A stretch of DNA of 35,099 nucleotides from NCBI GenBank assembly GCA_000320545.1, contig ADNK01001397.1, positions 1-35,099 of the forward strand, written 5' to 3'. The first letter of the stretch is position 1; each line of letters opens with the position of its first letter. This DNA comes from Bigelowiella natans CCMP2755. Its lineage: Eukaryota > Protista > Cercozoa. Of this stretch, positions 2,132 to 23,622 are shown piece by piece. A program made the translations under genes and the position numbers. The notes below the pieces were generated by a model. The model saw nothing but the letters and a program-made list of their open reading frames with translations. It was not told the DNA's origin and searched no databases.

Positions 2132-5100
2132 ATGGCCAAGGAAAGCGCAGAGCACCTCCTGATTCTGCGGGAGGCGTGCTATGGACTTCTTTGTCGTGTC
2201 CACTGGAACCATAATCCACAGTTCCTGAATCCCACATCGCTGGAGAGCAAGGATATTTCACAAGTGATCCGCTTTGCCAAGAGAAGCTTCCCAAAGATTA
2301 GTTGTCTAGAGGCAAGGCAGCAGATCAAGACATTCGACGCATTTGCCTCGAAGGCAGAAGCGATAGTAAATGAGCTAGAGGATTGGTGAGTTTTCATTTT
2401 AAAACTCGTGAGAAGAAGAGAGGAGTTATGGTCGTTGAATGTGACAGGTATCGGACGATTTGCGATGTCATCTCATTTAACGGCAAAGCTCTCACAGCCT
2501 TGAACACGTTTGTAAAGAACGTGACAACACTGCGGAAGGTACTTTATGCTTGCCAGCGGCACACCTGCCGTCTGGATTCGCTTTTAGCTAATCAATCTGA
2601 TAAAAATTCAAATCACAGGCAAACTTCCACCTTATGATGCTGTTCTTTGAACTTCTTGGGGGCTACGTAAAGCTTCAGATTGCAATGCAGGTGAACAACA
2701 GCTAAATGCAATAACCTTGAAACTTGGCGCACCCTTCACATTAGATTGAGATCTTCCATGTACGCGTCTCTGTCTTCTGCGACAAACAGAGCGTAGGATT
2801 CAAGGCGCGGAACATTGCAATGTACATCATGGCCCTAGAGACTTCTCAAAGCAAAAAAGGTCATTATGTGTGACGATAAACTTTATAACTACCCTTATTG
2901 CCCCTGCTTCCCTACTGTGTAATGAAAATGTCGCTGCCATTCGAGGAACATAAATGTAATTGGTGGGAGGCGGAGAGGGGTTATAAGGAGAGGCCGAAGA
3001 TGGAAGGGTGGCTAACGGAAATCCCATTGATATTGAACTATACAGACGAGCGATTAGATGCCGTTTTAAAATACATGAGCGAGATGATGGGAAACCAGGA
3101 TCTGAAGCTTGAAGAACGTTTAAAGGTAGGTGTTGCTCGCACCATGATGCCTTTTTCCATGTGCTTTCTGGAATTTTAACGATACCTTTGAAGGCAGCAG
3201 GAACCACCACCACCACCACTTCCCCTTCCATTTCATTCGGTGTGGATTAGGTTATAGCTTAGTGTGTTAGGGCAGAGCACCCGAGTCTTAATCGACAATC
3301 TGCGAGTTCTCCATACACGTATCTCGTGAAGCAAACGTCTCTCACATAACGGTGCCGGCTTCCTGTATGGTGTGTGTGTGTGTGTGTGTGTGCGTGTGTG
3401 CGTGCGTGCGTGCGTGCGTGCTTCCCCCAATCAAGGTTACGTTCGCCACTTTGAGACAGCAATGCGAGCCGATGACGCAGGTCGTGCGGGACTCGTGCAA
3501 GTTCTTCTGGAGCTCCATCCAGAAATGGGCGCCCGCGGAGAGCTTCGAGCGCCACCGCATGTTCAGCATCCTGTACGACGCCAGCAAGATCATCCAGCCC
3601 GCGCGCACGGAGAACTACCTGGAGCTCGAGTACCTCAACGGGGTCCGGGAGTGGCTCCAGTACGCGCTGCTGGTCTGCCCCGCGGCGCTGCAGGAGCAGG
3701 CGGCGCGGTCGTGCCTGAACAAGATCATCAGCAACTACTTCGTGACCCCCGTGTTCCGCGACATCACGTTCGAGCTGTGCAAGTCGTGGGACTCCACCTT
3801 CTGGGACTACAAGTGCGGGCACATAAGCCAGGGGACAAAGTTCTACCTCAAGACCCACCGCGACGACGTCTTCAAGGATGCGTACCTCAAGGGCAATGAG
3901 TGCGCGCTGAACCACAGGTCCCTCCGGCGCTACCTCCAGGTGATGCTGCGGCAGTACGTCTGCCTGTTCACGGAGATTCCCGGCCTGGCCGCGCCCAAGT
4001 TCCAGCTGGTGCTCGCCCTGCTGAAGCTGGCCTCCGACGAGATCCACTGGTACTTCCAGCACACCAACGTGAAGCCGTTCAAGAGCCACAAGCAGAAGTG
4101 GCTCGACCCCCTCTCCAAGGACCAAAACATAGTGAAGCTCATCGCCGCCTGCGTGGACCTCTGCCAGCTCGTCTCCAAGCACGCCGACGTCGTGCGGGAG
4201 TACTTCATCGAGTACATCAGAGACATCGACGCCCCGCGGTGCATCAGCGAGCTCGGGAAGATTAGCCAGAAGTACGCGAAGCAGGTCCCCGCGGAGGTCC
4301 AGAACGCCATCCGGGTTTTGACCGAGGAGGCGAAGAACATCAGCCCCGAGTCAAACTTCTCGGTCATCCAGCTCAACTTCTTCCGGACCTCGTGCTGGCT
4401 GAGCTCCAGGGGCTCGGGGGTGCCGGCCGACGAGGCCAACGCGGCGCTCGCGGTCGTCAACGAGATGTTCACCCACTTCTCCAACGTGCTGCAGACGGAG
4501 CAGCGGCTCGTAGAGACCGCCAACATCGGCGCGCTCATCTGGTACAAGGAGGACTTCAAGCAGGTGAAGGAGTGGACGCTGGGCCGCTCGGACCTCTACC
4601 AGTACTCGATGGCGCTGATGCAGGTGCTGGAGCACGTCCGGTACGACCTCAACCTCCGCTACTGCCCGGACGAGCAGGCGTTCATAATACGCGCGACGAC
4701 CAAGTTCGCCGAGTTCGTGATGGAGCACATCTGCCGCGCGATCATCGAGAACTTCGACAAGATGCTGGGCTGGGCCAACTACCTCAAGGAACTCGGCGGG
4801 CTCAACCCGGTGATCAACAAGTACCTGAGCCTTAACCGGAAGGGGCGGCCCAAGCTGCAGGAGACCGCGCAGCCCGGGGTGGAGAGCAGGTATGGCGGCC
4901 AGGGCTACTACTCCGTCCAGGTGCAAGCGCAGGCCGTTGCAGACCTCCTCGGAGCGGTGCGGGAGCTGAGGCAGTGCCAGGTCTTCAAGACCGTGATCAA
5001 CACCCACGATTGGTTGTACGAGGCGCTTGATGTGCACGTCGATGCCAAGATACGGGGCCTCTTCGAGTCGAAGGACCAGCGCCTCTGCCGGCCCTCCGAG

Positions 5101-6294
5101 GCGCTCAGCCGCCTGCGCTGCATACAGCGCGCGCTGACGTTCGTGGAGCAGCACATCATGCTGAACGCCAGCGACATCCTGCGCGGGGCGGTCCTCAAGC
5201 ACTTCGCCAACGTGGCTGCGGGCACGATCGGCGCGCCGCTCAAGACGGACACCAAGTCGAGCGCCGCGATCCAGAAGGTGGGGAAGTTTTACTGGGACGT
5301 CGTCAACCACAGCAACACCGCCTTCTCGCCGCTCAAGATACACTTCGTCACGCGCGCGCACGGGCGCAGGCACCGGGACGACGTCAATGCGGAGGACTTC
5401 ACCACGCACCCGGAGCTCCGCGCCCTGTGCCACGTGGTAGGCCCATACGGCGTCAAGGCCATCCAGAGCGTGCTGCTCTCCAACCTCGGGAGCAGCATTG
5501 CGGAGATGAAGCGGATCATTGCCAACAACAGCGTGTACCTGGGGCAGCTCGACTTCGTCGATATCACGTCGTGGGAGAACATCGTGACCAAGGTGAGCGG
5601 CAAGGACGAGTTCCTTCGGCTCGCCGTCCAGGTCGGGCGGTGCCTGCAGCTGATCTCCACGCTGAAGACCGCGCAGCGCGCGGTGCAGGAGAACGACATC
5701 CCGTTCGTCTCCCGGATCATAGAGCTGGTGATGCGGCGCATCGACAAGGACGGGAAGATCACGCCCGGGCAGACGCTGTGCAACGTGCTGACCGACTCGG
5801 GGGTGGAGGACCCGATGTACGACCAAGGCCTCAAGGCCGTGTTCCAGAGGGGCTTCTCCTCGGGGGTGGTTCTCTCGCACTTCCCCAAGATGTTCGCGTG
5901 CCTCTTCATGTCGGAGATGTGGAAGAGCACGCGGTTCCAGCCGGAGGCCGAGGCCTTCAGCACCGGCGTCGAGAGCGTCATCACGACGATCCAGACGGTC
6001 ATCCCGGCCATCTGCTCGTCGCGCGAGAAGTCGATGGGCATGCTGCGCGACTTCGTCACGCTCTCCGCGCACGCGCTGCTCCACATGAACTCCAAGGCCG
6101 AGGCGAACAGCCGCGCCATGCGCGGCTACCACATCCCCTCGATGATGATCTTCATGAGCCAGTTTATGGAGACCTGCAAGGGAATGTCGATGGATATCCT
6201 CGAGAGGTGCCTCCCCTTCACGCTCATGCGAACCAAGATCATCGAGATCTACGAGAACCTGCGCGTGCAGACGGAGGAGAAGGGGGCGGCGTGA
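2132..6294 (+). CDS. NCKAP1: Nck-associated protein 1 (NAP1/HEM-2), SCAR/WAVE regulatory complex subunit
   Basis: Exons 2132-2385, 2448-2538, 2619-2690, ~2790-2859, ~2988-3126 and 3436-6294. Translation AEHLLILREACYGLLCRVH..SQVIRFAKRSFPKI..WYRTICDVISF..ANFHLMMLFFELLGGYVKL..LEYLNGVREWLQYALLVCP..QPGVESR..CRPSEAL..AEDFTTHPELRALCHVVGPYGVK..SMDILERCLPFTLMR follows the NCKAP1 family motifs in order. The stop at 6292-6294 overlaps a GTGAGT donor, so a short extra 3' exon is possible. Confidence 0.92.
3370..3421 (+). repeat. (GT)n grading into (GCGT)n, just upstream of the acceptor at 3435
   Basis: Directly visible. Confidence 0.95.
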
Positions 6295-7237: not shown

Positions 7238-9614
7238 CTAGCCTTGCACATCATCTGGGAGGACGTCGGAACGGTACCTAAACTGCACTCGAAGCGGTAG
7301 GTGATCACTAGGCCAGCTCTCACATGGGAGGAAAGTCTCGCTTGTTCCACCAGCAGTGTTGTCAGCAGCTCCACCACCATCAGCACCAACTCCAGCTTCA
7401 GCCCTGGGAACAACTCCCTTGCCGTTCACTCCCTTGTCAACCCACGACTGAGGTTGCTGAGCATTGCTCGCCACCAAGCTGCTGCTGTGGAAAACGTGGT
7501 CGATCTGCCCCGTGAAGCCGGGCGTCACGTTGGTGGCGAAGGAGCGCTTGCTGCCGGTGGGGAACGCCGAGCTGAGTTTCAGGTCATGGCGCATTATCAG
7601 GGACGTGCAGATTTGCCTGGCGTCAGCTGCCAGGGCTCTTGCAGACGCTGAGTTTGCGCTGTAGGCAGCTGGAATCTGGTCCTTGGCTCTCATCGTGGCC
7701 TTCTGAACAGCATCGAGCATCTTCTTGTAATTCTCTACCTCATCGTCGGTCTTCTTCGCCCACCAATACGGCTGCCTGCAGCGCCCATTTTTGCAGACGA
7801 AGAACTCCAGCTTCTTGCCAGTGTTGGGGTCGACGCCGGCGTGAAGGGCCTTTGGCACCTTCTCGTTTTGCGAGAGGGACTCGTGCTTCAGCGGCTCGAA
7901 TGTTCTAGATGAGTGGGGGGGGAGGGGGGGGGGGGTAAGGGAAAACGCTCAATATCGCTACAATCATAATCATCACCATCACCATCATAACCTCAGCCCA
8001 ACTTTTGTCATGTCATCATCTATTATCATCATCTATCATCGCCATCTATCACCATCCTTTATCACCACACAACGGGTACCCATTGCACTTCGTGCACCTG
8101 AGCGAGACCAGGACAACAGCAAACAGTAGCAGAGAGCAAGAGGAGTGAGGAGGGGGACAGATCGAACGACGAGAGAATAAGAAAAAGAAGGAAAAAGGCT
8201 CTCCGAGCTTATATACGACAGCACATGCGTAGATAATACCTTTGGAACATGAGCTCCGGCCTGAATTTCAGCTGCATCTGCTTGGCCACAACCTGAAAGG
8301 CAGCTCTGTGGTCCTTCTCCGTAACGAGGACGAACGGCGGGCAGTCTCTCCGCTGCACGAGCTTCTTCGACTGCGTGATTACGAGCCTGCGCTCCCTCTT
8401 TGCGAGCGAGAATAGGCTGTAGCACGTGTTGCTGTTCCACTTGCCGCTGCCGGCACCGCGCAGCGGCTGTGCGCGAGGTGGTGGCGGCCTTGGCGACGAT
8501 GATGACGAGGACGAGTGATCCTTCGCGTCGTTGTCGTTGTCGTCGTCCTCGTCGCCGAACATGTGCGCATCGACACCAACCTTCCGCAAAGAGCGCGCTA
8601 GTTTGTCCAGGCCTGCATCGGCGATAAGCACTCGTCGTATTTTGCGGTCGTTCTGAGCTGCAGCAGCTGGTCCGCGCGTAGCATTGCCCCCTTGCCCCTC
8701 CCCCCCCCCTTCCCCCTTCACCTCATCTCCTCCCCCCCCCTCTTCGGTCGCGTGTTGCTGCTTCCACAACCGCAGTGTAGGCTGGCTGTCTGTCGCTGCC
8801 TCGCCGTCCGTTTGCCGTCGGATAGCGGATATATCATATTCGCCATCAGCGAGGAAGCGGAAGGTATAGCTACCCGGCGTTGAGTTGAGGTCTCCGCAGA
8901 GTATCAGGTTTACGTCCGGCGGTAGTTTTGGTACAGGTTTCTCCCACTTCGATTCGTCATGCTCCTGTGATCTGCGAGGAGGAGGAGGAGGAGTTGCTGC
9001 TGCTACTATCGTGTTTCTTGTCTTCCCGTCCCCCTCCTCTTTCCTAGAGAGATATGCCTGGATGCAGCGGGTGAGGAGGGCAATTTGCTTGAGCTTCACA
9101 TCTTCATAGTTCGGATTCCAGAAGAGATGGCAATTCGCAACCAGAAGAAGTCCAGAGGCGGGTCCTTGGCCTTCCTTGGCTGTGCTCGTTGCCATCGTTG
9201 CTGTCGTTGTTGTCTGGTGCAGTAAGTCCCGCAAAATTACCAGTTGCCCCACGTTGTTTCTTCGCAGCCGAATGGCGTTCGAATCGTCTGCTACGTCGGC
9301 AAGGAGGTTCATATTTACCCCTTCCGCCGACACCTTCCTGAATCGCTCGCAGCGCCACGCGACCAAGCAGCCATCCTTCTTGGGGGACTCGCTTCGTGAT
9401 CGGCTCCCGTCTTCTGTGTGCGGTTACATCGGAAATGTGCAGGTGTGAAAGTGTGCGAGCGTAGAGTAGCTCTATGGACGGAAGAAAAAGGATAATAAGA
9501 TTGTCGCTGATGGGGCTGAAGCACATTGACGAATGCTAAATTCGCACCCTCGAGGGCACGCACGACCTGCATCATCATCGTCATCCAACCACATACTTAT
9601 CACCATCATCATCA

Positions 9615-9670
<56 letters not shown>

Positions 9671-10310
9671 CGACACGTGTTTCATTATCAAGACCATAAT
9701 CGATGCCTCGCTGGCAGTAATCGCATCTGTAGCCGAGGCTCGTAAGCTCCTTCTGCCAAAAGTCATCAAAATGGTCCACCTCCTGCAAGCAAAGAATGTC
9801 CGCGTCGAGGCGCGGCAAAATATGCCGGAGCGCCTTCGAGCGACTTTTCCAGTGGAGGATCTCGTGTGGGCGACAGTACTCAAAGTTTTTCCGATGGCAG
9901 TACTCATCCGCCAGCACATTCAGAGATACAAGAGAGAAAGAACGGTCTAAGGGAAGCGTCATATAAGGGGTTATAGGTTGTCGAACAACTTTTAGGACGA
10001 TAGCTCCTACCTGAGCTTCTGCCATCATCGGGCCTGCGCCAGTGCCATGGCTGCCCCCAAGGACTAAGAATAACATATACGCAGTTTGAAATCATGGCTT
10101 ACGATTCTCGCAGGGTGGAGCGGGAAGAGTTATCGTCTTCTACCTGATCATCGAAATCGCACACGAGCTACGCTACCATCGTCCCTTTCTTCTGCTAACT
10201 GTTCATGGTCTTCTGGGGTGGGGGAATCGACTGACGAAACTGTTGCCTCTATTGTTGCCAATCTTCCGACCACACAGGCGATTTGAGTCTCCGTTTATAC
10301 TTCCTTTCAT
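7238..10310 (-). CDS. CCR4/Angel/nocturnin-family EEP nuclease (deadenylase-like) with an internal Mut7-C domain
   Basis: EEP motifs in order: SLNVLADEY, ADILCLQEVDHF, DGCLVAWRCERF, NNVGQLV, VANCHLFWNPNYEDVKLKQ, ILCGDLNSTP, TNVTPGFTGQIDHVF, WPSDHLPL. Mut7-C motifs lie between GDLNS and the C-terminal EEP part. Main exons ~8240-9413, 8080-8097 and 7238-7904. The 5' exons and the ATG at 10310 are tentative. Confidence 0.88.
9617..9667. repeat. (CA)n microsatellite in an intron of the EEP gene; (GT)n on its sense strand
   Basis: Directly visible. Confidence 0.95.
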
Positions 10311-18648: not shown

Positions 18649-21600
18649 TCATCGCTTTCGGAACTTCACCAACCACCAGGTAATAGATTCCTCTCTAACC
18701 TTATCTCCTTTGTCGCTTACCCAGAACTCACCTTCGTCCTTAGGTTCGTGTCCATACCAGCCCTCTGCATCAAGGTCCCCCAGGACCTTATACCAGTGCT
18801 CAAAGGGTAAGTCGGGAACAGCTAGGTAGAGTAGCTGATATTTTCCGTCCTTTATTTTCATAGCTACCCTCTCCATATTTCGTAATCCAGGGTAGCCTAG
18901 ATAGACAATCTTCATGCGCCAATCGTCGTTCACCCTGACCTTATTGTTTCCATATTCCACATCGAACTTAGGTCGGGGTCCTAAACAAGGCATTGCTCGC
19001 TCCCACACAGTAGGGTTTACTTTAACATCCTCTAGGAGCTTCTCACCGATATCATAATTCTTTAGGTGACTGATGTGGCGCAAGGTGACCCTGTTCCCAT
19101 CATAGATGTAGTACTGCTTCCTCCCCTTCCTCTCGGTAACCTTTGCAACGCCACCCCAGAAGGGGTCTTGTTTATTTCTCGATCTCAGATTTACCTTGGC
19201 CCTAACATACTGTCCTTCCTTTAGAACTCGGCCATCGTACGGGACCTTCTCGTCTTCGCTCTCGGTATCGTCGTCGTTGTCGTCGCCTTCTTCCCTCTCC
19301 TTATCCTTGATACCTCCCCCAGACGTGAAGGTGTCGTTTACTAACCCTTGTATCTTGTCTGGTGTGGTGCTATTTATCCTGCTTAGGTTGGCCAAGGTGC
19401 GGTGGAGTCGCTCTACCTTGGAGTTGGACTGGGCATAGTATACAGGTGAGGCATCAATATTAGGGTGTGGTAGCTGTAGAAGAGAGGTCTCATTATCCAC
19501 ATGTAACTTCTTTGGTATCTTGTTTATGCTAACTTCATCAGGGATAGCCTGGAGCTCAGACTCCCAGGTACGGTAGCAGTTAGTAAGCCTCTGCTTATAT
19601 AAGCCTTTGTTCTTCTTAGCAACGTTGACCTTGATAATCTTTTTAACCCAGCACTTTCCAGTGGCCACATCAACGAAGGTAAGGTAGTGATAGCCATCGT
19701 ACTTATAAACATCAATTTGCACGATATCTAAGAAGTTCCTTGCTTTGATTTTCTTAGATGCACGGCTCTTGCTGGACTCCTTGGTGGCGACGCCTGCCGC
19801 CTTCAAGCTGGAGCGCCTGCAGCCACGCAGGTATGTCCTTATCTCTTTTAGCTTGTAGGGCCAGTAGTAATGGTAGAGTAGAGCAGTGATATGGTTTTCT
19901 CCTACGTGTGCAGGTCCATGGGCGGTAAAGAGAAGGGCTCCCCTGGTCCGCCGTGGCACGTAGGTACGCCTAACATTATTAGTGTATACATATATCCTAT
20001 CACTAAGTACCTCATGCTTGTGTTTGTATTTATCCAGGTGTTCTTGAAGGTGCTGGAGCTCCTCTGGCTCAGGCAGGAAGTCGCCGTCCTCGAAGGTAAT
20101 CGCGTTAACCATAGGGGTGACCTGGGTAGGGACTTTCTTTTCGAACAGCCTGCTGAAATAGTCAGCAAGCTGCTTGTCTCCTGGTGCGTAGACCACTGTC
20201 CTCTTGTCCCTAAACTCTTCCGTGTCCGCCCTCATAGCTGCATACTCATCGTTAGGCGCTTCGAGCTTGCGGTCGATGCCTAGGAGGGGCTTGTGGTCAG
20301 TCATTAAGGTGAAGCTGGGCACCGACAGCAGGTAGTATCTTAGTTTCCTCTGCGCCTCAGTCATGGCTTTATACTCTCCTTTTGTAGGGCTGTACTTGGC
20401 CTCAGCTGCTGTGCAGGCCCTGCCCCACACCCGTATGATCTGCTGGTCTTGGGTAAGTACAGCAGCCATACCTAGCTTAGACCAGTCTGTCCATAGGGTA
20501 GCTGGTCTAGTAGTGTCTAGCTTAGCATTCAATAGGGTGTTGCTGCATAACTTTATTAGGTTATCGAAGTGGGCATCAAGGCCAGCCTTGGCCCACACCT
20601 TAGCGAAGCTGAGGCCTACAGAGTTCTCCTTCCGGTAAGCAGTAGTAAAAGCAGCTGCAGTCCTAGCGTAGGTAGGGGAGAACCTACGTAGTATCCAAGC
20701 TGCAGTCTGCAAGAATGACTTTAACTCCTTTGCATTCTTAGGTTTAGGGGCTTGCTGTAGTGCTGCTACTTTCTCGGGGTTTGGGGTGATGCGGCCTTGC
20801 TCCAGGTAATATCCACACCACTTGATTCTTGTAGCTAGGAATGTACACTTCTGCAGTCTAATAGTAAAACCGAAGTGTGCAAACCTAATAAATATATTTT
20901 CCAGGAGGAAGATCTGAGCGACGACTGTGTTGGTACATATTATGTCATCATCCACATACACAAACACAAACACCCACAACACAGACGCCATCCCATCATG
21001 TGTGTATGCCCTGTAGTTCTGACTACTGAACGCATCCCCTGATATGCTTAGGCCGTAAGGGAATACGACGAAGTGCCACTTCCTGTGCCTGCTGGAGAAC
21101 GCGGTAATGGGGCGGGAGGTTTTGTGGATGGGTGTCTGCATGTATGATTCATTTTTATCTAGGGAAGAGTAGTATTTGTATCCTATGACGTGTTCAATAA
21201 CGTCATCTATCCTTGGTGTAGGTGTCTGGATCCTCTTTATTACTCGGTTGTGGCGGATGAAGTTGTGCGCCAGGCGGAAGAAAGGGTAAGTAGGTTTCTT
21301 AGCTAGCACATGTCTCACGTTCCATGGTGAGTTGCTTGGCTCTATCTTCCCTTCCTTTGCCCATTCATTGATCTGCCACTCTATCTTTTCCCAGTCCGCT
21401 TCCGGTCGCCTATGTTCTGGGTCATTGATGATGCACTCTTCGTATCCCTTCTTTAGCTCGATCTTTACTGGGGTAAGCTTGCTGGAGGGCTTCGTCGTCG
21501 GCTTGGTGATGTCAGAGTACTTCTCGTTTAATATTTTATTAATGTACTTTTTGCCTTTGTCGATATCCCAATCATCAGCTGGGGGGGTCTTGTCCAGTAG

Positions 21601-23622
21601 CTCCGTTATCTGTCGGATGGTCTTGCCGGGGTTCTTCTTCCGTAGCTCGGTAGGTGTAGGTAGCTTGTTGTCCGCTAGGTCCATAAACTCTAACGCATTA
21701 ACGCTTGACTCAGAGGTCCACTCGTCAAGCCGTATCATGTTCTGGCTGATGGTCCTGCCTGACTTCTTTGGCAACTTAGCAAAGTATATCTTGTGATTGT
21801 AGAATGATATGATCCCCCCTAATTTTTCTAGGGCATCCTGTCCGAGGAGTAGTTCCATGGATAAAGTCATGGCTACTCGGGTCTTGATTTGGGTCTCCGC
21901 GTCGCTGCCAGGTATCTGTAGCTTTAGCATTAGCTCACCGACGGTCTTCATGGAAGAGCTTCCGTCTGCTTGAGCATATTTACGTTCTTTCTTAGTCACT
22001 TGATCCAATAGTCCTAACCTTCTTACTGTGCTTAGGCTTATGAAGGACTTCGGCATGCTGCCACTATCCCAAAGGGCAGGTAGTTTCTTGTAGTCTCCGT
22101 AGCTGTCTTTAACTTTAACCTTGGTCATAGCAACTTTGATAGTCCTGTTAGCGTCTTCGTCATTAATGTTGCATACTCCTAAGTTCTTTATGTCGTCTAG
22201 GGTCATGGGCTTGTCTTGGTCCTGCGTTGCTGGTACTGCTGTCTTCGTCGGCGCCTGCTTAAGGTGATCTAATATTCCGTTTATCTGCTGCTGTATAGCA
22301 TTGATACTGTTCTGCTTTTTGTTCTTATATTTATTGTTCTTCCCGTTGTTGCTGCCTTGCCATTTGCTGTTGTTATATCCTTGTCCTCTGCCTTTCTTTC
22401 TCTTTAACTTCTCGTAGTGTTCGTTGAGCTGCCTGATCGTCATCCTGGGTCGTCCTTCTTTCCTGTCTCTGCAGTCTTTAGCGGTGTGTTTCCCTTTACG
22501 TGAGCAGTATCCGCAACGTCGGTTACCTTCCCTGTCCTTGTACCAGTCTCGCTGCGGCTTAATAGCGTTAATGTTTCCTATGCCAGGTACCTTAGGGCTG
22601 GTAAACTTGCGGTCCTGCTCCTGCTCGCGTAGGGATATAGCCTGCACTGCTGCCTCCATCGTGGTGTAGCCTTTCTCCGTAACGTAAGTGGATTCCTTTA
22701 TCTTTAACTTGAACTCTTCAAACCTTGCCTGATCATCACCTGTGTTGTAATTAAAATCATGTAGTTCGTCGATCATATCCTGGAAGCGCGTGGCAAAGTC
22801 TCTAACAGGTTCTCTCTCATGCTGCATCATTGCTCTGTATTTTCTAATAGCCTGGGGTAGGGAGTTAGCATCCTGTTCATTTACAAAAGCCTTCATTATC
22901 GCCTCAACGTCTCGTAGCCCACTAACTGTAGTGTGTATTTTCTCTAGCTGCCTGATCCGGGTCCTGCCTGTCTCGTAAAGGTCCATGGCTTGCTTTATTA
23001 TAGCTAGCCATTTGAGCTTGTCGTTTTCGGTGGGGTTAGGGGTAAAGTCGCAGAGTATACTCCTAGCGTTCTTCCACCACCTCCTTGCCTCACCTCTTTT
23101 CCCGTTGTATTTCGTTATCATAACCGGTGCTGTTTTAACAGACATGAACTGGGTGTTCCGCTGTACCGGCTGCTGCTGCTTGACGGTGCTCTGGGTCGTC
23201 CCCCGCGAGGCGCCCAGACCCCCGTCGTTCCTAAACAAAGCTGCCCACTCTGGAGGTAAGTCTGCTTCGTAATCCATGATGTCCTGCATGATAGCTGCCC
23301 AAACATCATGTGTCTGATACTTGTATTCTATCGATACTTTCAGTTTGGCGTAGTTGCTCGCCCTGGGTCGCAAGGCTCGTAATGCCATTACGACCTTCTT
23401 GCTTTCGGCGGCCACGTCCTCGTCGTCCGCCTCGTAGAAGTTCTCCAGTGCCTCTGCTGCTGCATCTGCTTTCTTAATCCCGGGTGCTGGTCCCGGCGGT
23501 GCCTGTGGAGGTGTTCCTCCTCCTTCCTTAGCGTCCGTATCGCCCTTCCTTTCCTGTTTCTGCTCGTGCCCTTGCACGGCCTGCGAGCCAAAGTCCTGCT
23601 GTTCTTCTAGCTGCTGTGACAT
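18649..23622 (-). CDS. Gag-Pol polyprotein (1657 aa): capsid, zinc knuckle, aspartic protease, RT, RNase H, integrase, SH3/GPY-F module, C-terminal Dam-like extension
   Basis: Uninterrupted ORF. MHR-like QHEREPVRDFATRF; knuckle CGYCSRKGKHTAKDC; protease ALWDSGS; RT FPYGL..YVDD; RNase H TDWS..GEY..TDHKPL..ADYFSR; integrase AHGPAHVG..QIDV..VDNE..SNSKVERLHRTL; LKEGQYV..PFWGG..HISHLKNY. Confidence 0.96.
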   Translation of the reverse strand: MSQQLEEQQDFGSQAVQGHEQKQERKGDTDAKEGGGTPPQAPPGPAPGIKKADAAAEALENFYEADDEDVAAESKKVVMALRALRPRASNYAKLKVSIEYKYQTHDVWAAIMQDIMDYEADLPPEWAALFRNDGGLGASRGTTQSTVKQQQPVQRNTQFMSVKTAPVMITKYNGKRGEARRWWKNARSILCDFTPNPTENDKLKWLAIIKQAMDLYETGRTRIRQLEKIHTTVSGLRDVEAIMKAFVNEQDANSLPQAIRKYRAMMQHEREPVRDFATRFQDMIDELHDFNYNTGDDQARFEEFKLKIKESTYVTEKGYTTMEAAVQAISLREQEQDRKFTSPKVPGIGNINAIKPQRDWYKDREGNRRCGYCSRKGKHTAKDCRDRKEGRPRMTIRQLNEHYEKLKRKKGRGQGYNNSKWQGSNNGKNNKYKNKKQNSINAIQQQINGILDHLKQAPTKTAVPATQDQDKPMTLDDIKNLGVCNINDEDANRTIKVAMTKVKVKDSYGDYKKLPALWDSGSMPKSFISLSTVRRLGLLDQVTKKERKYAQADGSSSMKTVGELMLKLQIPGSDAETQIKTRVAMTLSMELLLGQDALEKLGGIISFYNHKIYFAKLPKKSGRTISQNMIRLDEWTSESSVNALEFMDLADNKLPTPTELRKKNPGKTIRQITELLDKTPPADDWDIDKGKKYINKILNEKYSDITKPTTKPSSKLTPVKIELKKGYEECIINDPEHRRPEADWEKIEWQINEWAKEGKIEPSNSPWNVRHVLAKKPTYPFFRLAHNFIRHNRVIKRIQTPTPRIDDVIEHVIGYKYYSSLDKNESYMQTPIHKTSRPITAFSSRHRKWHFVVFPYGLSISGDAFSSQNYRAYTHDGMASVLWVFVFVYVDDDIICTNTVVAQIFLLENIFIRFAHFGFTIRLQKCTFLATRIKWCGYYLEQGRITPNPEKVAALQQAPKPKNAKELKSFLQTAAWILRRFSPTYARTAAAFTTAYRKENSVGLSFAKVWAKAGLDAHFDNLIKLCSNTLLNAKLDTTRPATLWTDWSKLGMAAVLTQDQQIIRVWGRACTAAEAKYSPTKGEYKAMTEAQRKLRYYLLSVPSFTLMTDHKPLLGIDRKLEAPNDEYAAMRADTEEFRDKRTVVYAPGDKQLADYFSRLFEKKVPTQVTPMVNAITFEDGDFLPEPEELQHLQEHLDKYKHKHEVLSDRIYVYTNNVRRTYVPRRTRGALLFTAHGPAHVGENHITALLYHYYWPYKLKEIRTYLRGCRRSSLKAAGVATKESSKSRASKKIKARNFLDIVQIDVYKYDGYHYLTFVDVATGKCWVKKIIKVNVAKKNKGLYKQRLTNCYRTWESELQAIPDEVSINKIPKKLHVDNETSLLQLPHPNIDASPVYYAQSNSKVERLHRTLANLSRINSTTPDKIQGLVNDTFTSGGGIKDKEREEGDDNDDDTESEDEKVPYDGRVLKEGQYVRAKVNLRSRNKQDPFWGGVAKVTERKGRKQYYIYDGNRVTLRHISHLKNYDIGEKLLEDVKVNPTVWERAMPCLGPRPKFDVEYGNNKVRVNDDWRMKIVYLGYPGLRNMERVAMKIKDGKYQLLYLAVPDLPFEHWYKVLGDLDAEGWYGHEPKDEGEFWVSDKGDKVREESITWWLVKFRKR

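What the first reader, a model, noticed from the sequence alone, without database searches (positions are those of the whole stretch)
7760..8638. Mut7-C (PIN-like plus Zn-ribbon) domain inserted inside a CCR4-family EEP nuclease
Seen: between the EEP motif GDLNSTP (~8875-8895) and the C-terminal EEP motifs (LSSAF, TNVTPGFTGQIDHVF, PSDHLPL) lies RRVLIADAGLDKLARSLRKVGVDA..LFSLAKRERRLVITQSKKL..AAFQVVAKQMQLKFRPELMFQRCTKCNG..VPKA..FFVCKNGRCRQPYWW. Established: this is the Mut7-C pattern (D.ML..LAR.LR..G.D; A..E.R.LLT.D; F.RC..CN; F..C..C...YW). In eukaryotes Mut7-C is best known C-terminal to the DEDD exonuclease of MUT-7/EXD3-type small-RNA trimming enzymes. Inference: an unrelated 3'-end nuclease fold has acquired the same module as a loop insertion, suggesting a convergent RNA 3'-trimming or silencing enzyme. 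The T-R-D aspartate is Ser here, so Mut7-C may bind RNA rather than cut it, while the EEP catalytic residues look intact.
Basis: partly seen in the sequence, partly recalled or inferred. Interest (0 to 1): 0.8.

Follow-up and report, generated by a model that had tools for sequence, protein, structure and literature searches.

The report
CCR4-type nuclease with nested Mut7-C domain
This alga's gene encodes an RNA-tail-trimming enzyme of the CCR4 type with a second, probably RNA-gripping, module (Mut7-C) inserted in its middle; the design is real and shared by many single-celled eukaryotes, databases auto-label it, and I found no paper that describes it.

Summary
A four-exon gene on the minus strand (7238-10076) has GT-AG introns and an 18-nt micro-exon. 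It encodes a CCR4-like EEP nuclease with a Mut7-C domain (PIN-like part plus four-Cys zinc ribbon, about 7760-8640) nested between the GDLNS strand and the C-terminal EEP motifs.

- **Domains:** Pfam finds both domains.
- **Gene model:** A 717-aa homologue read from a transcript-sized contig aligns in order across all four exons, including the micro-exon.
- **Not a one-off:** 114 of 278 fetched relatives carry Mut7-C. In all 73 where both EEP halves are also found, Mut7-C lies between them.
- **Taxa named so far:** a diatom, two rhizarians and a euglenid.
- **Origin:** An EEP-only tree fits a single origin next to true CCR4, not Angel.
- **EEP residues:** The catalytic residues and the CCR4-specific T-N-x-T..F hairpin are conserved.
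- **Mut7-C residues:** The T-x-D aspartate is serine family-wide. No LRR is present.

Most likely this is a 3'-5' exoribonuclease that does not dock to CAF1 through an LRR, with Mut7-C helping to bind RNA as it does in MUT-7/EXD3. That function is inferred, not shown.

JGI already auto-names such proteins "Ccr4 / protein with PIN domain", but I found no paper describing them. I rate it a new variant of a known kind, of moderate interest.

The parts
9671..10076 (-). Exon 1: the start codon at 10076 is provisional. It holds the EEP N-terminal part with the SLNVLA Asn and the LCLQEVD Glu.
   Evidence: Pfam PF03372 29.9 bits. tblastn of P0001 residues 104-181 matches 9941-9705 at 57% identity. The frame upstream of the ATG is closed by stops.
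9414..9670 (-). Intron 1 (257 nt, GT...AG), which contains a (GT)n microsatellite
   Evidence: Sequence read; splice-site check
8240..9413 (-). Exon 2: EEP middle part (DGCLVAW, NCHLFWNP, GDLNSTP), a Gly/Glu-rich linker, and the N half of Mut7-C from about 8640
   Evidence: Pfam PF01927 36.9 bits and PF03372 26.7 bits. CNOT6L is the best PDB sequence hit, E 1.5e-10. P0001 residues 195-521 align to 9381-8239.
7760..8640 (-). Genomic span of the nested Mut7-C domain (PIN-like part plus four-Cys zinc ribbon). It is split by introns 2 and 3 and carries a low-complexity Asp/Ser/Pro loop.
   Evidence: The homologue's insert, folded alone, best matches the MUT-7 CTD 8Q66.
8098..8239 (-). Intron 2 (142 nt, GT...AG)
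8080..8097 (-). 18-nt micro-exon that supplies the first Cys pair of the zinc ribbon (R-CTKCN-G)
   Evidence: tblastn of P0001 residues 521-527 gives RCTKCNG at 8099-8079 with 100% identity, in order with the flanking exons. Both Cys are conserved in the family, 33/34 and 34/34.
7905..8079 (-). Intron 3 (175 nt, GT...AG)
7238..7904 (-). Exon 4: second half of the zinc ribbon (FFVCKNGRCRQPYWW), a helix and linker, then the EEP C-terminal part (LSSAF, ATNVTPGFTGQIDHVF, PSDHLPL). The stop codon is at 7240-7238.
   Evidence: Translation. Pfam PF03372 profile positions 175-225. P0001 residues 528-716 align to 7903-7280.

Best explanation
The locus is one spliced, single-copy gene for a member of a conserved protist subfamily of CCR4-type EEP nucleases.

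Shown:
- The EEP fold is complete and carries all catalytic residues.
- It also carries the CCR4-specific T-N-x-T..F hairpin. The literature ties the Asn to contact with the 3'-OH of the terminal nucleotide. Its numbering here is my mapping, and the role of the Phe in adenine recognition is from my memory.
- A Mut7-C domain is nested in the loop after the GDxNS strand and the helix that follows it.
- That Mut7-C keeps its first Asp, its Glu and all four zinc-binding Cys, but has Ser in place of the T-x-D Asp.
- The family has no LRR.

Inferred:
- The enzyme is a Mg2+-dependent 3'-5' exoribonuclease, probably preferring poly(A).
- It is not tethered to CAF1 through an LRR as canonical CCR4 is.
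- The Mut7-C insert does not cut. It adds a basic RNA-binding surface that holds the substrate for the EEP site, as MUT7-C does for the DEDD exonuclease of MUT-7/EXD3.
- So the same helper module was recruited twice, by two unrelated 3'-5' exonuclease folds.
For: **Gene model**
- GT-AG introns, matching phases and no internal stop.
- Homologue P0001 aligns in order over all four exons. It is a 717-aa ORF on a 2207-nt JGI contig, which I take to be a transcript.
- This locus is the only one in the genome that matches P0001 beyond the EEP N-terminal region.

**Domains**
- Pfam finds both in the window, in the 10 best hits and in 34/34 (Mut7-C) and 33/34 (EEP) aligned members.

**Nesting**
- All 73 proteins with EEP-N, Mut7-C and EEP-C detected have them in that order.

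**Fold**
- The full model of P0001 (pLDDT 75.8, pTM 0.74) best matches CNOT6L (E 2e-20, TMt 0.74-0.80), ahead of ANGEL2, PDE12 and Nocturnin.
- The insert folded alone (pLDDT 92) best matches the MUT-7 CTD 8Q66 (Foldseek prob 0.97; Z 8.8, 142 residues, rmsd 3.0).

**Residues**
- EEP N, E, H, D, N, D, D and H are kept in 29-34 of 34 members.
- Hairpin Asn: 56/59 in the family, 15/16 in true CCR4, 0/10 in Angel. Hairpin Phe: 57/59, 15/16 and 1/10.
- The Asn contacts the 3'-OH and is CCR4-specific according to PMC8216464.
- In Mut7-C the T-x-D position is Ser in 30/34 members, against Asp in a canonical bacterial protein.

**Phylogeny**
- On EEP columns alone the Mut7-C carriers cluster.
- One clade is not rejected, and the constrained tree is better by 47 lnL (p-AU 0.92).

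**Role of Mut7-C**
- In MUT-7 and EXD3 it raises RNA affinity 6-8 fold and speeds degradation. The isolated CTDs served as negative controls in the RNase assays (PMC11347159).
Against: - No biochemical or transcript data exist for this protein or any family member.
- I could not see model coordinates, so the position of Mut7-C relative to the EEP active site is unknown.
- Three of the four acidic residues of Mut7-C are kept, so residual nuclease activity is not excluded.
- Other CCR4-like EEPs proved to be phosphatases (ANGEL2, Nocturnin), so fold and catalytic residues alone do not fix the substrate.
- A small insert-less clade named 'angel homolog 2-like' falls inside the family in the free tree.
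- The N-terminus of the window's gene is not established.
Confidence: 0.6

Rival explanations
1. The EEP domain is an RNA-end or dinucleotide phosphatase rather than an exonuclease. It would resemble ANGEL2 (2',3'-cyclic phosphatase) or Nocturnin/CCR4C (NADP(H) phosphatase), with Mut7-C bringing in an RNA such as a tRNA or a repair intermediate.
For: ANGEL2, PDE12 and Nocturnin are all strong structural matches to the P0001 model. The family lacks the LRR, as those enzymes do. A clade named 'angel homolog 2-like' nests in the family in the free tree. Plant CCR4C was recently shown to be an NADP(H) phosphatase (PMC12557515, seen).
Against: CNOT6L/CNOT6 and yeast Ccr4 are the best sequence and structure hits. 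The hairpin Asn and Phe typical of true CCR4 are kept in 56-57 of 59 members and are absent from the Angel clade. The family sits on the CCR4 side of a 99% SH-aLRT split from the main Angel clade.
Confidence: 0.15
2. Both modules cut. Mut7-C is an active PIN-like endoribonuclease that makes an entry cut, and the EEP domain then degrades the new 3' end.
For: The first Asp (31/34), the G-x-D Asp (32/34) and the Glu (27/34) of Mut7-C are conserved, and the Ser at the fourth position is itself conserved in 30/34. Mut7-C was first described as sharing the PIN pattern of catalytic residues (PMC1779556).
Against: The T-x-D Asp is lost across the family. From general knowledge, PIN nucleases normally need every acidic residue. 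The isolated CTDs of MUT-7 and EXD3 served as negative controls in RNase assays (PMC11347159). [quoted passage not shown]
Confidence: 0.12
3. [quoted passage not shown] It would tether the nuclease to a granule or complex rather than bind RNA.
For: In C. elegans the segment between the two Cys pairs binds MUT-8 and localises MUT-7 (PMC11347159). In this family that segment is about 35-40 residues long with conserved positions (A1 consensus). The family lacks any other partner-binding domain.
Against: MUT-8 binding depends on a Caenorhabditis-specific beta-sheet insertion, whereas RNA binding is proposed as the ancestral role. Invariant Arg residues (R425 and R472 of P0001) fit a nucleic-acid surface.
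Confidence: 0.1
4. The gene model is an artefact: two neighbouring genes, or a pseudogene read together.
For: No transcript from this organism could be consulted, because records of the window's own genome are withheld from the searches. The 18-nt exon is unusually small.
Against: The EEP fold would be cut in two without the flanking exons. Seventy-three independent proteins, several of them transcriptome ORFs, show the same order. All junctions are GT-AG, in phase and free of stops. The micro-exon matches RCTKCNG exactly.
Confidence: 0.03

Closest known systems
CCR4 / CNOT6 / CNOT6L deadenylase nuclease domain (EEP)
   Same: It is the best sequence and structure match. All catalytic residues are shared, along with the H-x-x-W-x-P motif and the T-N-x-T..F hairpin. 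The family is nearest to the LRR- and zf-type CCR4 groups in the tree.
   Different: There is no LRR, so no tether to CAF1 of the canonical kind. A Mut7-C module of roughly 190 residues plus linkers sits where CNOT6L has a loop of a few tens of residues between its DLNS and LKSAY motifs.
MUT-7 / EXD3 / Nibbler-type 3'-5' exoribonucleases with C-terminal MUT7-C
   Same: The same accessory domain (Pfam PF01927). The only solved example, 8Q66, is the best structural match for the insert. Both attach it to a 3'-5' exoribonuclease.
   Different: The catalytic domain there is DEDD (DNA_pol_A_exo1), unrelated to EEP. Mut7-C there is a C-terminal appendage, not nested. No PF01612 domain is found here.
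ANGEL1/2, Nocturnin, PDE12 (LRR-less CCR4-like EEPs)
   Same: EEP fold of the CCR4 class without an LRR; strong structural matches.
   Different: The Angel clade has Thr/Ser in place of the hairpin Asn and lacks the Phe. It is separated from the family by a 99% SH-aLRT split. None of these proteins has a Mut7-C.
Prokaryotic Mut7-C proteins (stand-alone in archaea; Ub-Mut7C fusions in bacteria)
   Same: The insert aligns over 95% of its length, at 25% identity, with a Chroococcidiopsis Ub-Mut7C/Mut7-C protein. It shares the L-x-D..L..LAR.LR, G-x-D, E-x-R-x-L-x-T, RC..CNG and C..C..YW motifs.
   Different: The canonical T-K-D is T-R/Q-S here. The family adds a variable low-complexity loop after the G-x-D strand and a conserved CPP motif.
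Plant-type CCR4 (CCR4a/b with a zf-C6H2-type N-terminal domain, PF15801)
   Same: A CCR4 nuclease in which a different module replaces the LRR. These are the closest named non-family hits to P0001.
   Different: The extra module is N-terminal and a zinc finger of another kind, not a nested Mut7-C.

Membership tests
Exo_endo_phos (EEP) superfamily, PF03372 | Profile match above Pfam's gathering score | tested here: met
   Exon 1 scores 29.9 bits and exon 2 scores 26.7 bits against a cut-off of 24.5. Exon 4 scores 18.2 bits on the C-terminal end of the profile. P0001 scores 63.7 bits.
Exo_endo_phos (EEP) superfamily, PF03372 | Catalytic set: Asn, Glu, His, Asp-x-Asn, Asp, Asp-His | tested here: met
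   All are visible in the window's translations and conserved in 29-34 of 34 family members.
CCR4 subfamily (CNOT6/6L, yeast Ccr4) | CCR4-specific beta-hairpin Asn (3'-OH contact) and Phe (T-N-x-T..F-x-G) | tested here: met
   The window has ATNVTPGFTG. The family keeps Asn in 56/59 and Phe in 57/59; true CCR4 15/16 for each; Angel 0/10 and 1/10. The role of the Asn is from PMC8216464. My mapping of its number onto the YTNYT Asn is probable, not certain.
CCR4 subfamily (CNOT6/6L, yeast Ccr4) | N-terminal LRR that binds CAF1/POP2 | tested here: not met
   No LRR family appears in any of the 34 members or in the window's pieces.
CCR4 subfamily (CNOT6/6L, yeast Ccr4) | Poly(A)-specific 3'-5' exoribonuclease activity | not testable with these tools
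   Needs an enzyme assay.
Mut7-C, PF01927 | Profile match above the gathering score | tested here: met
   The window's exon 2 alone scores 36.9 bits against 23.3. P0001 scores 76.6 bits. All 34 members match.
Mut7-C, PF01927 | Four-Cys zinc ribbon (C-x-x-C ... C-x(2-4)-C) after the PIN-like part | tested here: met
   CTKC lies in the micro-exon and CKNGRC in exon 4. The four Cys are kept in 33-34 of 34 members.
Mut7-C, PF01927 | Full set of PIN-type acidic residues, including the T-x-D Asp | tested here: not met
   The first Asp, the G-x-D Asp and the Glu are present. The T-x-D Asp is Ser in the window and in 30/34 members, against Asp in a canonical bacterial protein.
Mut7-C, PF01927 | Fold like the solved MUT-7 CTD | tested here: met
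   The insert model (pLDDT 92) against 8Q66_A gives Foldseek prob 0.97 at rank 1. VIA gives Z 8.8 with 142 aligned residues and rmsd 3.0; the next hit has Z 7.0. This was tested on homologue P0001, not on the window's joined protein.
MUT-7 / EXD3 family | DEDD 3'-5' exonuclease domain (PF01612) N-terminal to Mut7-C | tested here: not met
   No such Pfam hit appears in the window's pieces or in 34 family members.

The most novel reading that the evidence does not exclude
Mut7-C is a portable RNA 3'-end 'feeder' module that two unrelated exonuclease folds (DEDD in MUT-7/EXD3, EEP here) recruited independently. On this reading the protist family is a 3'-trimming or deadenylating enzyme that works outside the CCR4-NOT complex. 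It would act on a dedicated RNA class such as small RNAs, or on specific mRNAs, in diatoms, rhizarians and euglenids.
Probability: 0.3. Interest if true: 0.7.

Novelty: new variant of a known kind. Interest (0 to 1): 0.55.

Why it matters
The role of MUT7-C was assigned only in 2024, as an RNA-binding helper of one exonuclease family. Here the same module is nested in an unrelated 3'-5' exonuclease fold and kept across at least three distant eukaryotic lineages. Its catalytic Asp is lost throughout the family while the zinc ribbon and basic residues are kept. That is independent comparative support for MUT7-C as a general exonuclease helper.

The finding also defines an uncharacterised, LRR-less branch of the CCR4 family in ecologically important protists such as diatoms and chlorarachniophytes, whose RNA-decay machinery is poorly known. 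It offers a natural test case for how a domain inserted in a loop can retarget a nuclease.

Tried and rejected
- **Pfam PF01927 search of the whole genome:** no match. The domain is split by introns and the E-values are genome-wide, so this says nothing about absence.
- **phmmer of the Mut7-C pieces against PDB sequences:** only low-complexity chance hits (EED, CED-3). 8Q66 is too distant for a sequence search and appeared only by structure.
- **phmmer of exon 4 against PDB:** nothing. The C-terminal EEP match showed up only with the full-length homologue.
- **The search for related loci with alignment A2 in genome contigs:** I obtained a canonical Mut7-C from the plasmid collection instead.
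- **Literature:** no paper combines Mut7-C with deadenylase, CCR4 or Exo_endo_phos. All 10 papers that mention Mut7-C were listed, and I checked the four most relevant.
- **Apicomplexan origin:** my first guess. I dropped it once a Nckap1 gene, the genome size and earlier notes pointed to a chlorarachniophyte.
- **Joined protein:** P0001 was the full-length proxy.
Full report
**1. What is in the sequence**

On the minus strand between 10076 and 7238 lie four open segments.

- Exon 1 (10076-9671) carries the N-terminal EEP motifs SLNVLA and LCLQEVD.
- Exon 2 (9413-8240) carries DGCLVAW, NCHLFWNP and GDLNSTP. A Gly/Glu-rich linker follows. From about 8640 comes RRVLIADAGLDKLARSLRKVGVDA, then a low-complexity Asp/Ser/Pro loop, then ERRLVITQSKKLVQRRDCPP.
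- An 18-nt micro-exon (8097-8080) encodes R-CTKCN-G.
- Exon 4 (7904-7238) begins with the second half of a zinc ribbon (FFVCKNGRCRQPYWW) and ends with the C-terminal EEP motifs LSSAF, ATNVTPGFTGQIDHVF and PSDHLPL.

The three introns (257, 142 and 175 nt) are all GT...AG. The phases fit, and the coding length is 2265 nt (754 codons). Only the terminal stop is present. I checked this exon by exon without joining. Intron 1 holds a (GT)n microsatellite.

Pfam confirms both domains on the separate exons. Mut7-C scores 36.9 bits (E 5e-9, cut-off 23.3) on exon 2. Exo_endo_phos scores 29.9, 26.7 and 18.2 bits on exons 1, 2 and 4, covering the start, middle and end of the profile.

**2. Support for the gene model from relatives**

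I ran a full HMMER search with exon 2 against 1.84 billion cluster representatives. It gave 357 hits at E <= 1e-3. The best was P0001: 717 aa, 43% identical, E 4.8e-54.

P0001 is an uninterrupted ORF on a 2207-nt JGI contig. I take that contig to be a transcript, from its size. A tblastn of P0001 against the window aligns in order to all four exons:

- residues 104-181 to 9941-9705;
- residues 195-521 to 9381-8239;
- residues 521-527 (RCTKCNG, 100% identical) to 8099-8079;
- residues 528-716 to 7903-7280.

In the window's own genome (91.4 Mb, 3736 contigs) this is the only locus that matches P0001 beyond the EEP N-terminal region. Other loci are ordinary CCR4-like paralogues.

Records of the window's own genome are withheld from the protein searches (notes), so no annotated model or transcript of this organism could be consulted. 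Earlier notes of this scan call the genome Bigelowiella natans. I did not verify that.

**3. It is a family, not a one-off**

- All ten top hits that I scanned carry PF01927 and PF03372.
- I built family HMMs for the N-terminal EEP part, the Mut7-C part and the C-terminal EEP part. Of the 278 proteins fetched, 114 carry Mut7-C.
- In every one of the 73 where all three parts are detected, the order is EEP-N, Mut7-C, EEP-C.
- The ESM Atlas holds a cluster of 120 eukaryotic proteins with PF01927 (100% of members) and PF03372 (94%). Diatoms are its commonest phylum.
- Named sources so far are Pseudo-nitzschia delicatissima (diatom), Lapot gusevi and Amorphochlora amoebiformis (Rhizaria), and Ploeotia vitrea (euglenid).
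- JGI's pipeline already names such proteins 'mRNA deadenylase subunit Ccr4 / uncharacterized protein with PIN domain'. NCBI calls the Amorphochlora one hypothetical.
- None of 34 aligned members has an LRR or a plant-type zinc finger.

**4. One origin, on the CCR4 side**

I cut the insert out of each family member and built a tree from EEP columns only (115 rows, 331 columns, quick IQ-TREE).

- The 59 Mut7-C carriers fall into one 66-row group (SH-aLRT 89). It also holds six insert-less rows, including a small clade named 'angel homolog 2-like'.
- The carrier label needs three changes on this tree. The strongly supported branches force only one.
- The group lies with the LRR- and zf-type CCR4 proteins, on the far side of a 99% split from the main Angel clade.
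- Forcing all carriers into one clade gave a tree 47 log-likelihood units better than the free quick search (p-AU 0.92). A single acquisition is therefore compatible with the data.
- The window's exon 2 groups with P0001 and P0152 (98%).

**5. Fold**

The AlphaFold2 model of P0001, built with 34 family sequences, has pLDDT 75.8 and pTM 0.74. The ordered parts score above 90.

- Its best PDB matches are CNOT6L (E 2e-20, target TM 0.74-0.80). The alignment runs across the insert. CNOT6, ANGEL2, PDE12 and Nocturnin follow.
- By sequence, CNOT6L, CNOT6 and yeast Ccr4 also lead.
- The insert folded alone (193 residues, pLDDT 92) has the MUT-7 CTD (8Q66) as its top Foldseek hit (prob 0.97, E 0.02).
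- It is also the top VIA-align hit: Z 8.8, 142 residues, rmsd 3.0, covering both the PIN-like part and the ribbon. The next hit has Z 7.0.

**6. Residues**

- The EEP catalytic Asn, Glu, His, Asp-x-Asn, Asp and Asp-His are present in the window and in 29-34 of 34 members.
- The hairpin T-N-x-T..F-x-G keeps its Asn in 56/59 family rows and 15/16 true CCR4 rows, but in 0/10 Angel rows. Its Phe is kept in 57/59, 15/16 and 1/10.
- Chen et al. 2021 describe this Asn as contacting the terminal 3'-OH, and as conserved in CCR4 homologues but not in other EEP enzymes (PMC8216464). My mapping of their residue number onto the YTNYT Asn is probable, not certain.
- That the Phe helps recognise adenine is from my memory of the CNOT6L structure paper. 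I did not check it here.
- In Mut7-C, the first Asp (31/34), the G-x-D Asp (32/34), the Glu (27/34) and the four Cys (33-34/34) are conserved.
- The T-x-D Asp is Ser in 30/34 members and in the window.
- A canonical bacterial Ub-Mut7C/Mut7-C protein has LLTKD at that place. It comes from a Chroococcidiopsis plasmid and scores 162 bits in Pfam.

**7. How it most likely works**

Shown: this is a complete CCR4-type EEP nuclease with a nested Mut7-C that keeps its zinc site but lacks one catalytic acid. It has no LRR.

Established elsewhere: in MUT-7 and EXD3 the MUT7-C domain raises ssRNA affinity 6-8 fold and speeds degradation. The isolated domains bound RNA only weakly and served as negative controls in the RNase assays. 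RNA binding is proposed as the ancestral role (PMC11347159).

Inferred: the protein is a Mg2+-dependent 3'-5' exoribonuclease, probably preferring poly(A). It lacks the LRR through which canonical CCR4 docks to CAF1, and it uses Mut7-C as a built-in RNA-binding arm.

Rivals are a phosphatase role like ANGEL2 or Nocturnin, an active PIN-like endonuclease, a protein-docking role for Mut7-C, and a wrong gene model. The rival sections give the evidence for each.

The start codon is also provisional. P0001's first 100 residues are disordered and do not align.

**8. Novelty**

Both domains are known. The combination is recognised by automatic annotation and is widespread. In the searchable literature (8.1 million PMC papers plus bioRxiv), only 10 papers mention Mut7-C at all. 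None combines it with CCR4, deadenylase or Exo_endo_phos.

The two surveys of Mut7-C architectures list only three kinds: DEDD fusions (some with an added aminoacyl-tRNA editing domain), ubiquitin-like fusions and stand-alone forms (PMC5499597 and PMC1779556).

I therefore rate it a new variant of a known kind: an undescribed, LRR-less CCR4 branch with a nested helper domain. The window's gene is an ordinary member of that branch.

Noticed in passing
window 3352-6294 (+): A 980-aa open frame in GC-rich DNA (62-64% GC). It matches Nckap1/NAP1 of the SCAR/WAVE complex (Pfam PF09735, 409 bits, profile positions 197-1118). The first ~200 profile positions must lie in upstream exon(s).
   Followed up: partly
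window 18649-23622 (-): A 1657-aa open frame with reverse transcriptase and RNase H domains (a Ty3/gypsy-like retrotransposon). Another note of this scan concerns its integrase end.
   Followed up: partly
window 8080-8097 (-): The micro-exon is 18 nt long, so skipping it would keep the frame but delete the first Cys pair of the zinc ribbon. That isoform might lack a folded ribbon. No transcript data were available to test this.
   Followed up: no
window 9612-9665 (intron 1): A long (GT)n microsatellite lies directly after the exon 1 donor site. It offers many alternative GT donors.
   Followed up: no
P0004 (954 aa, ENA metagenome protein): This family member has three tandem Mut7-C modules inside the EEP insertion site (three Pfam stretches). 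P0010 (Ploeotia vitrea) adds an N-terminal DUF4291, and one member has a small methyltransferase domain.
   Followed up: partly
P0085, P0103, P0211, P0238 (EEP-only proteins, one named 'angel homolog 2-like', Schistocerca): In the free EEP tree this insert-less clade nests inside the Mut7-C family, and its hairpin has Ser in place of Asn. It may be a secondary loss of the insert or a long-branch artefact.
   Followed up: partly
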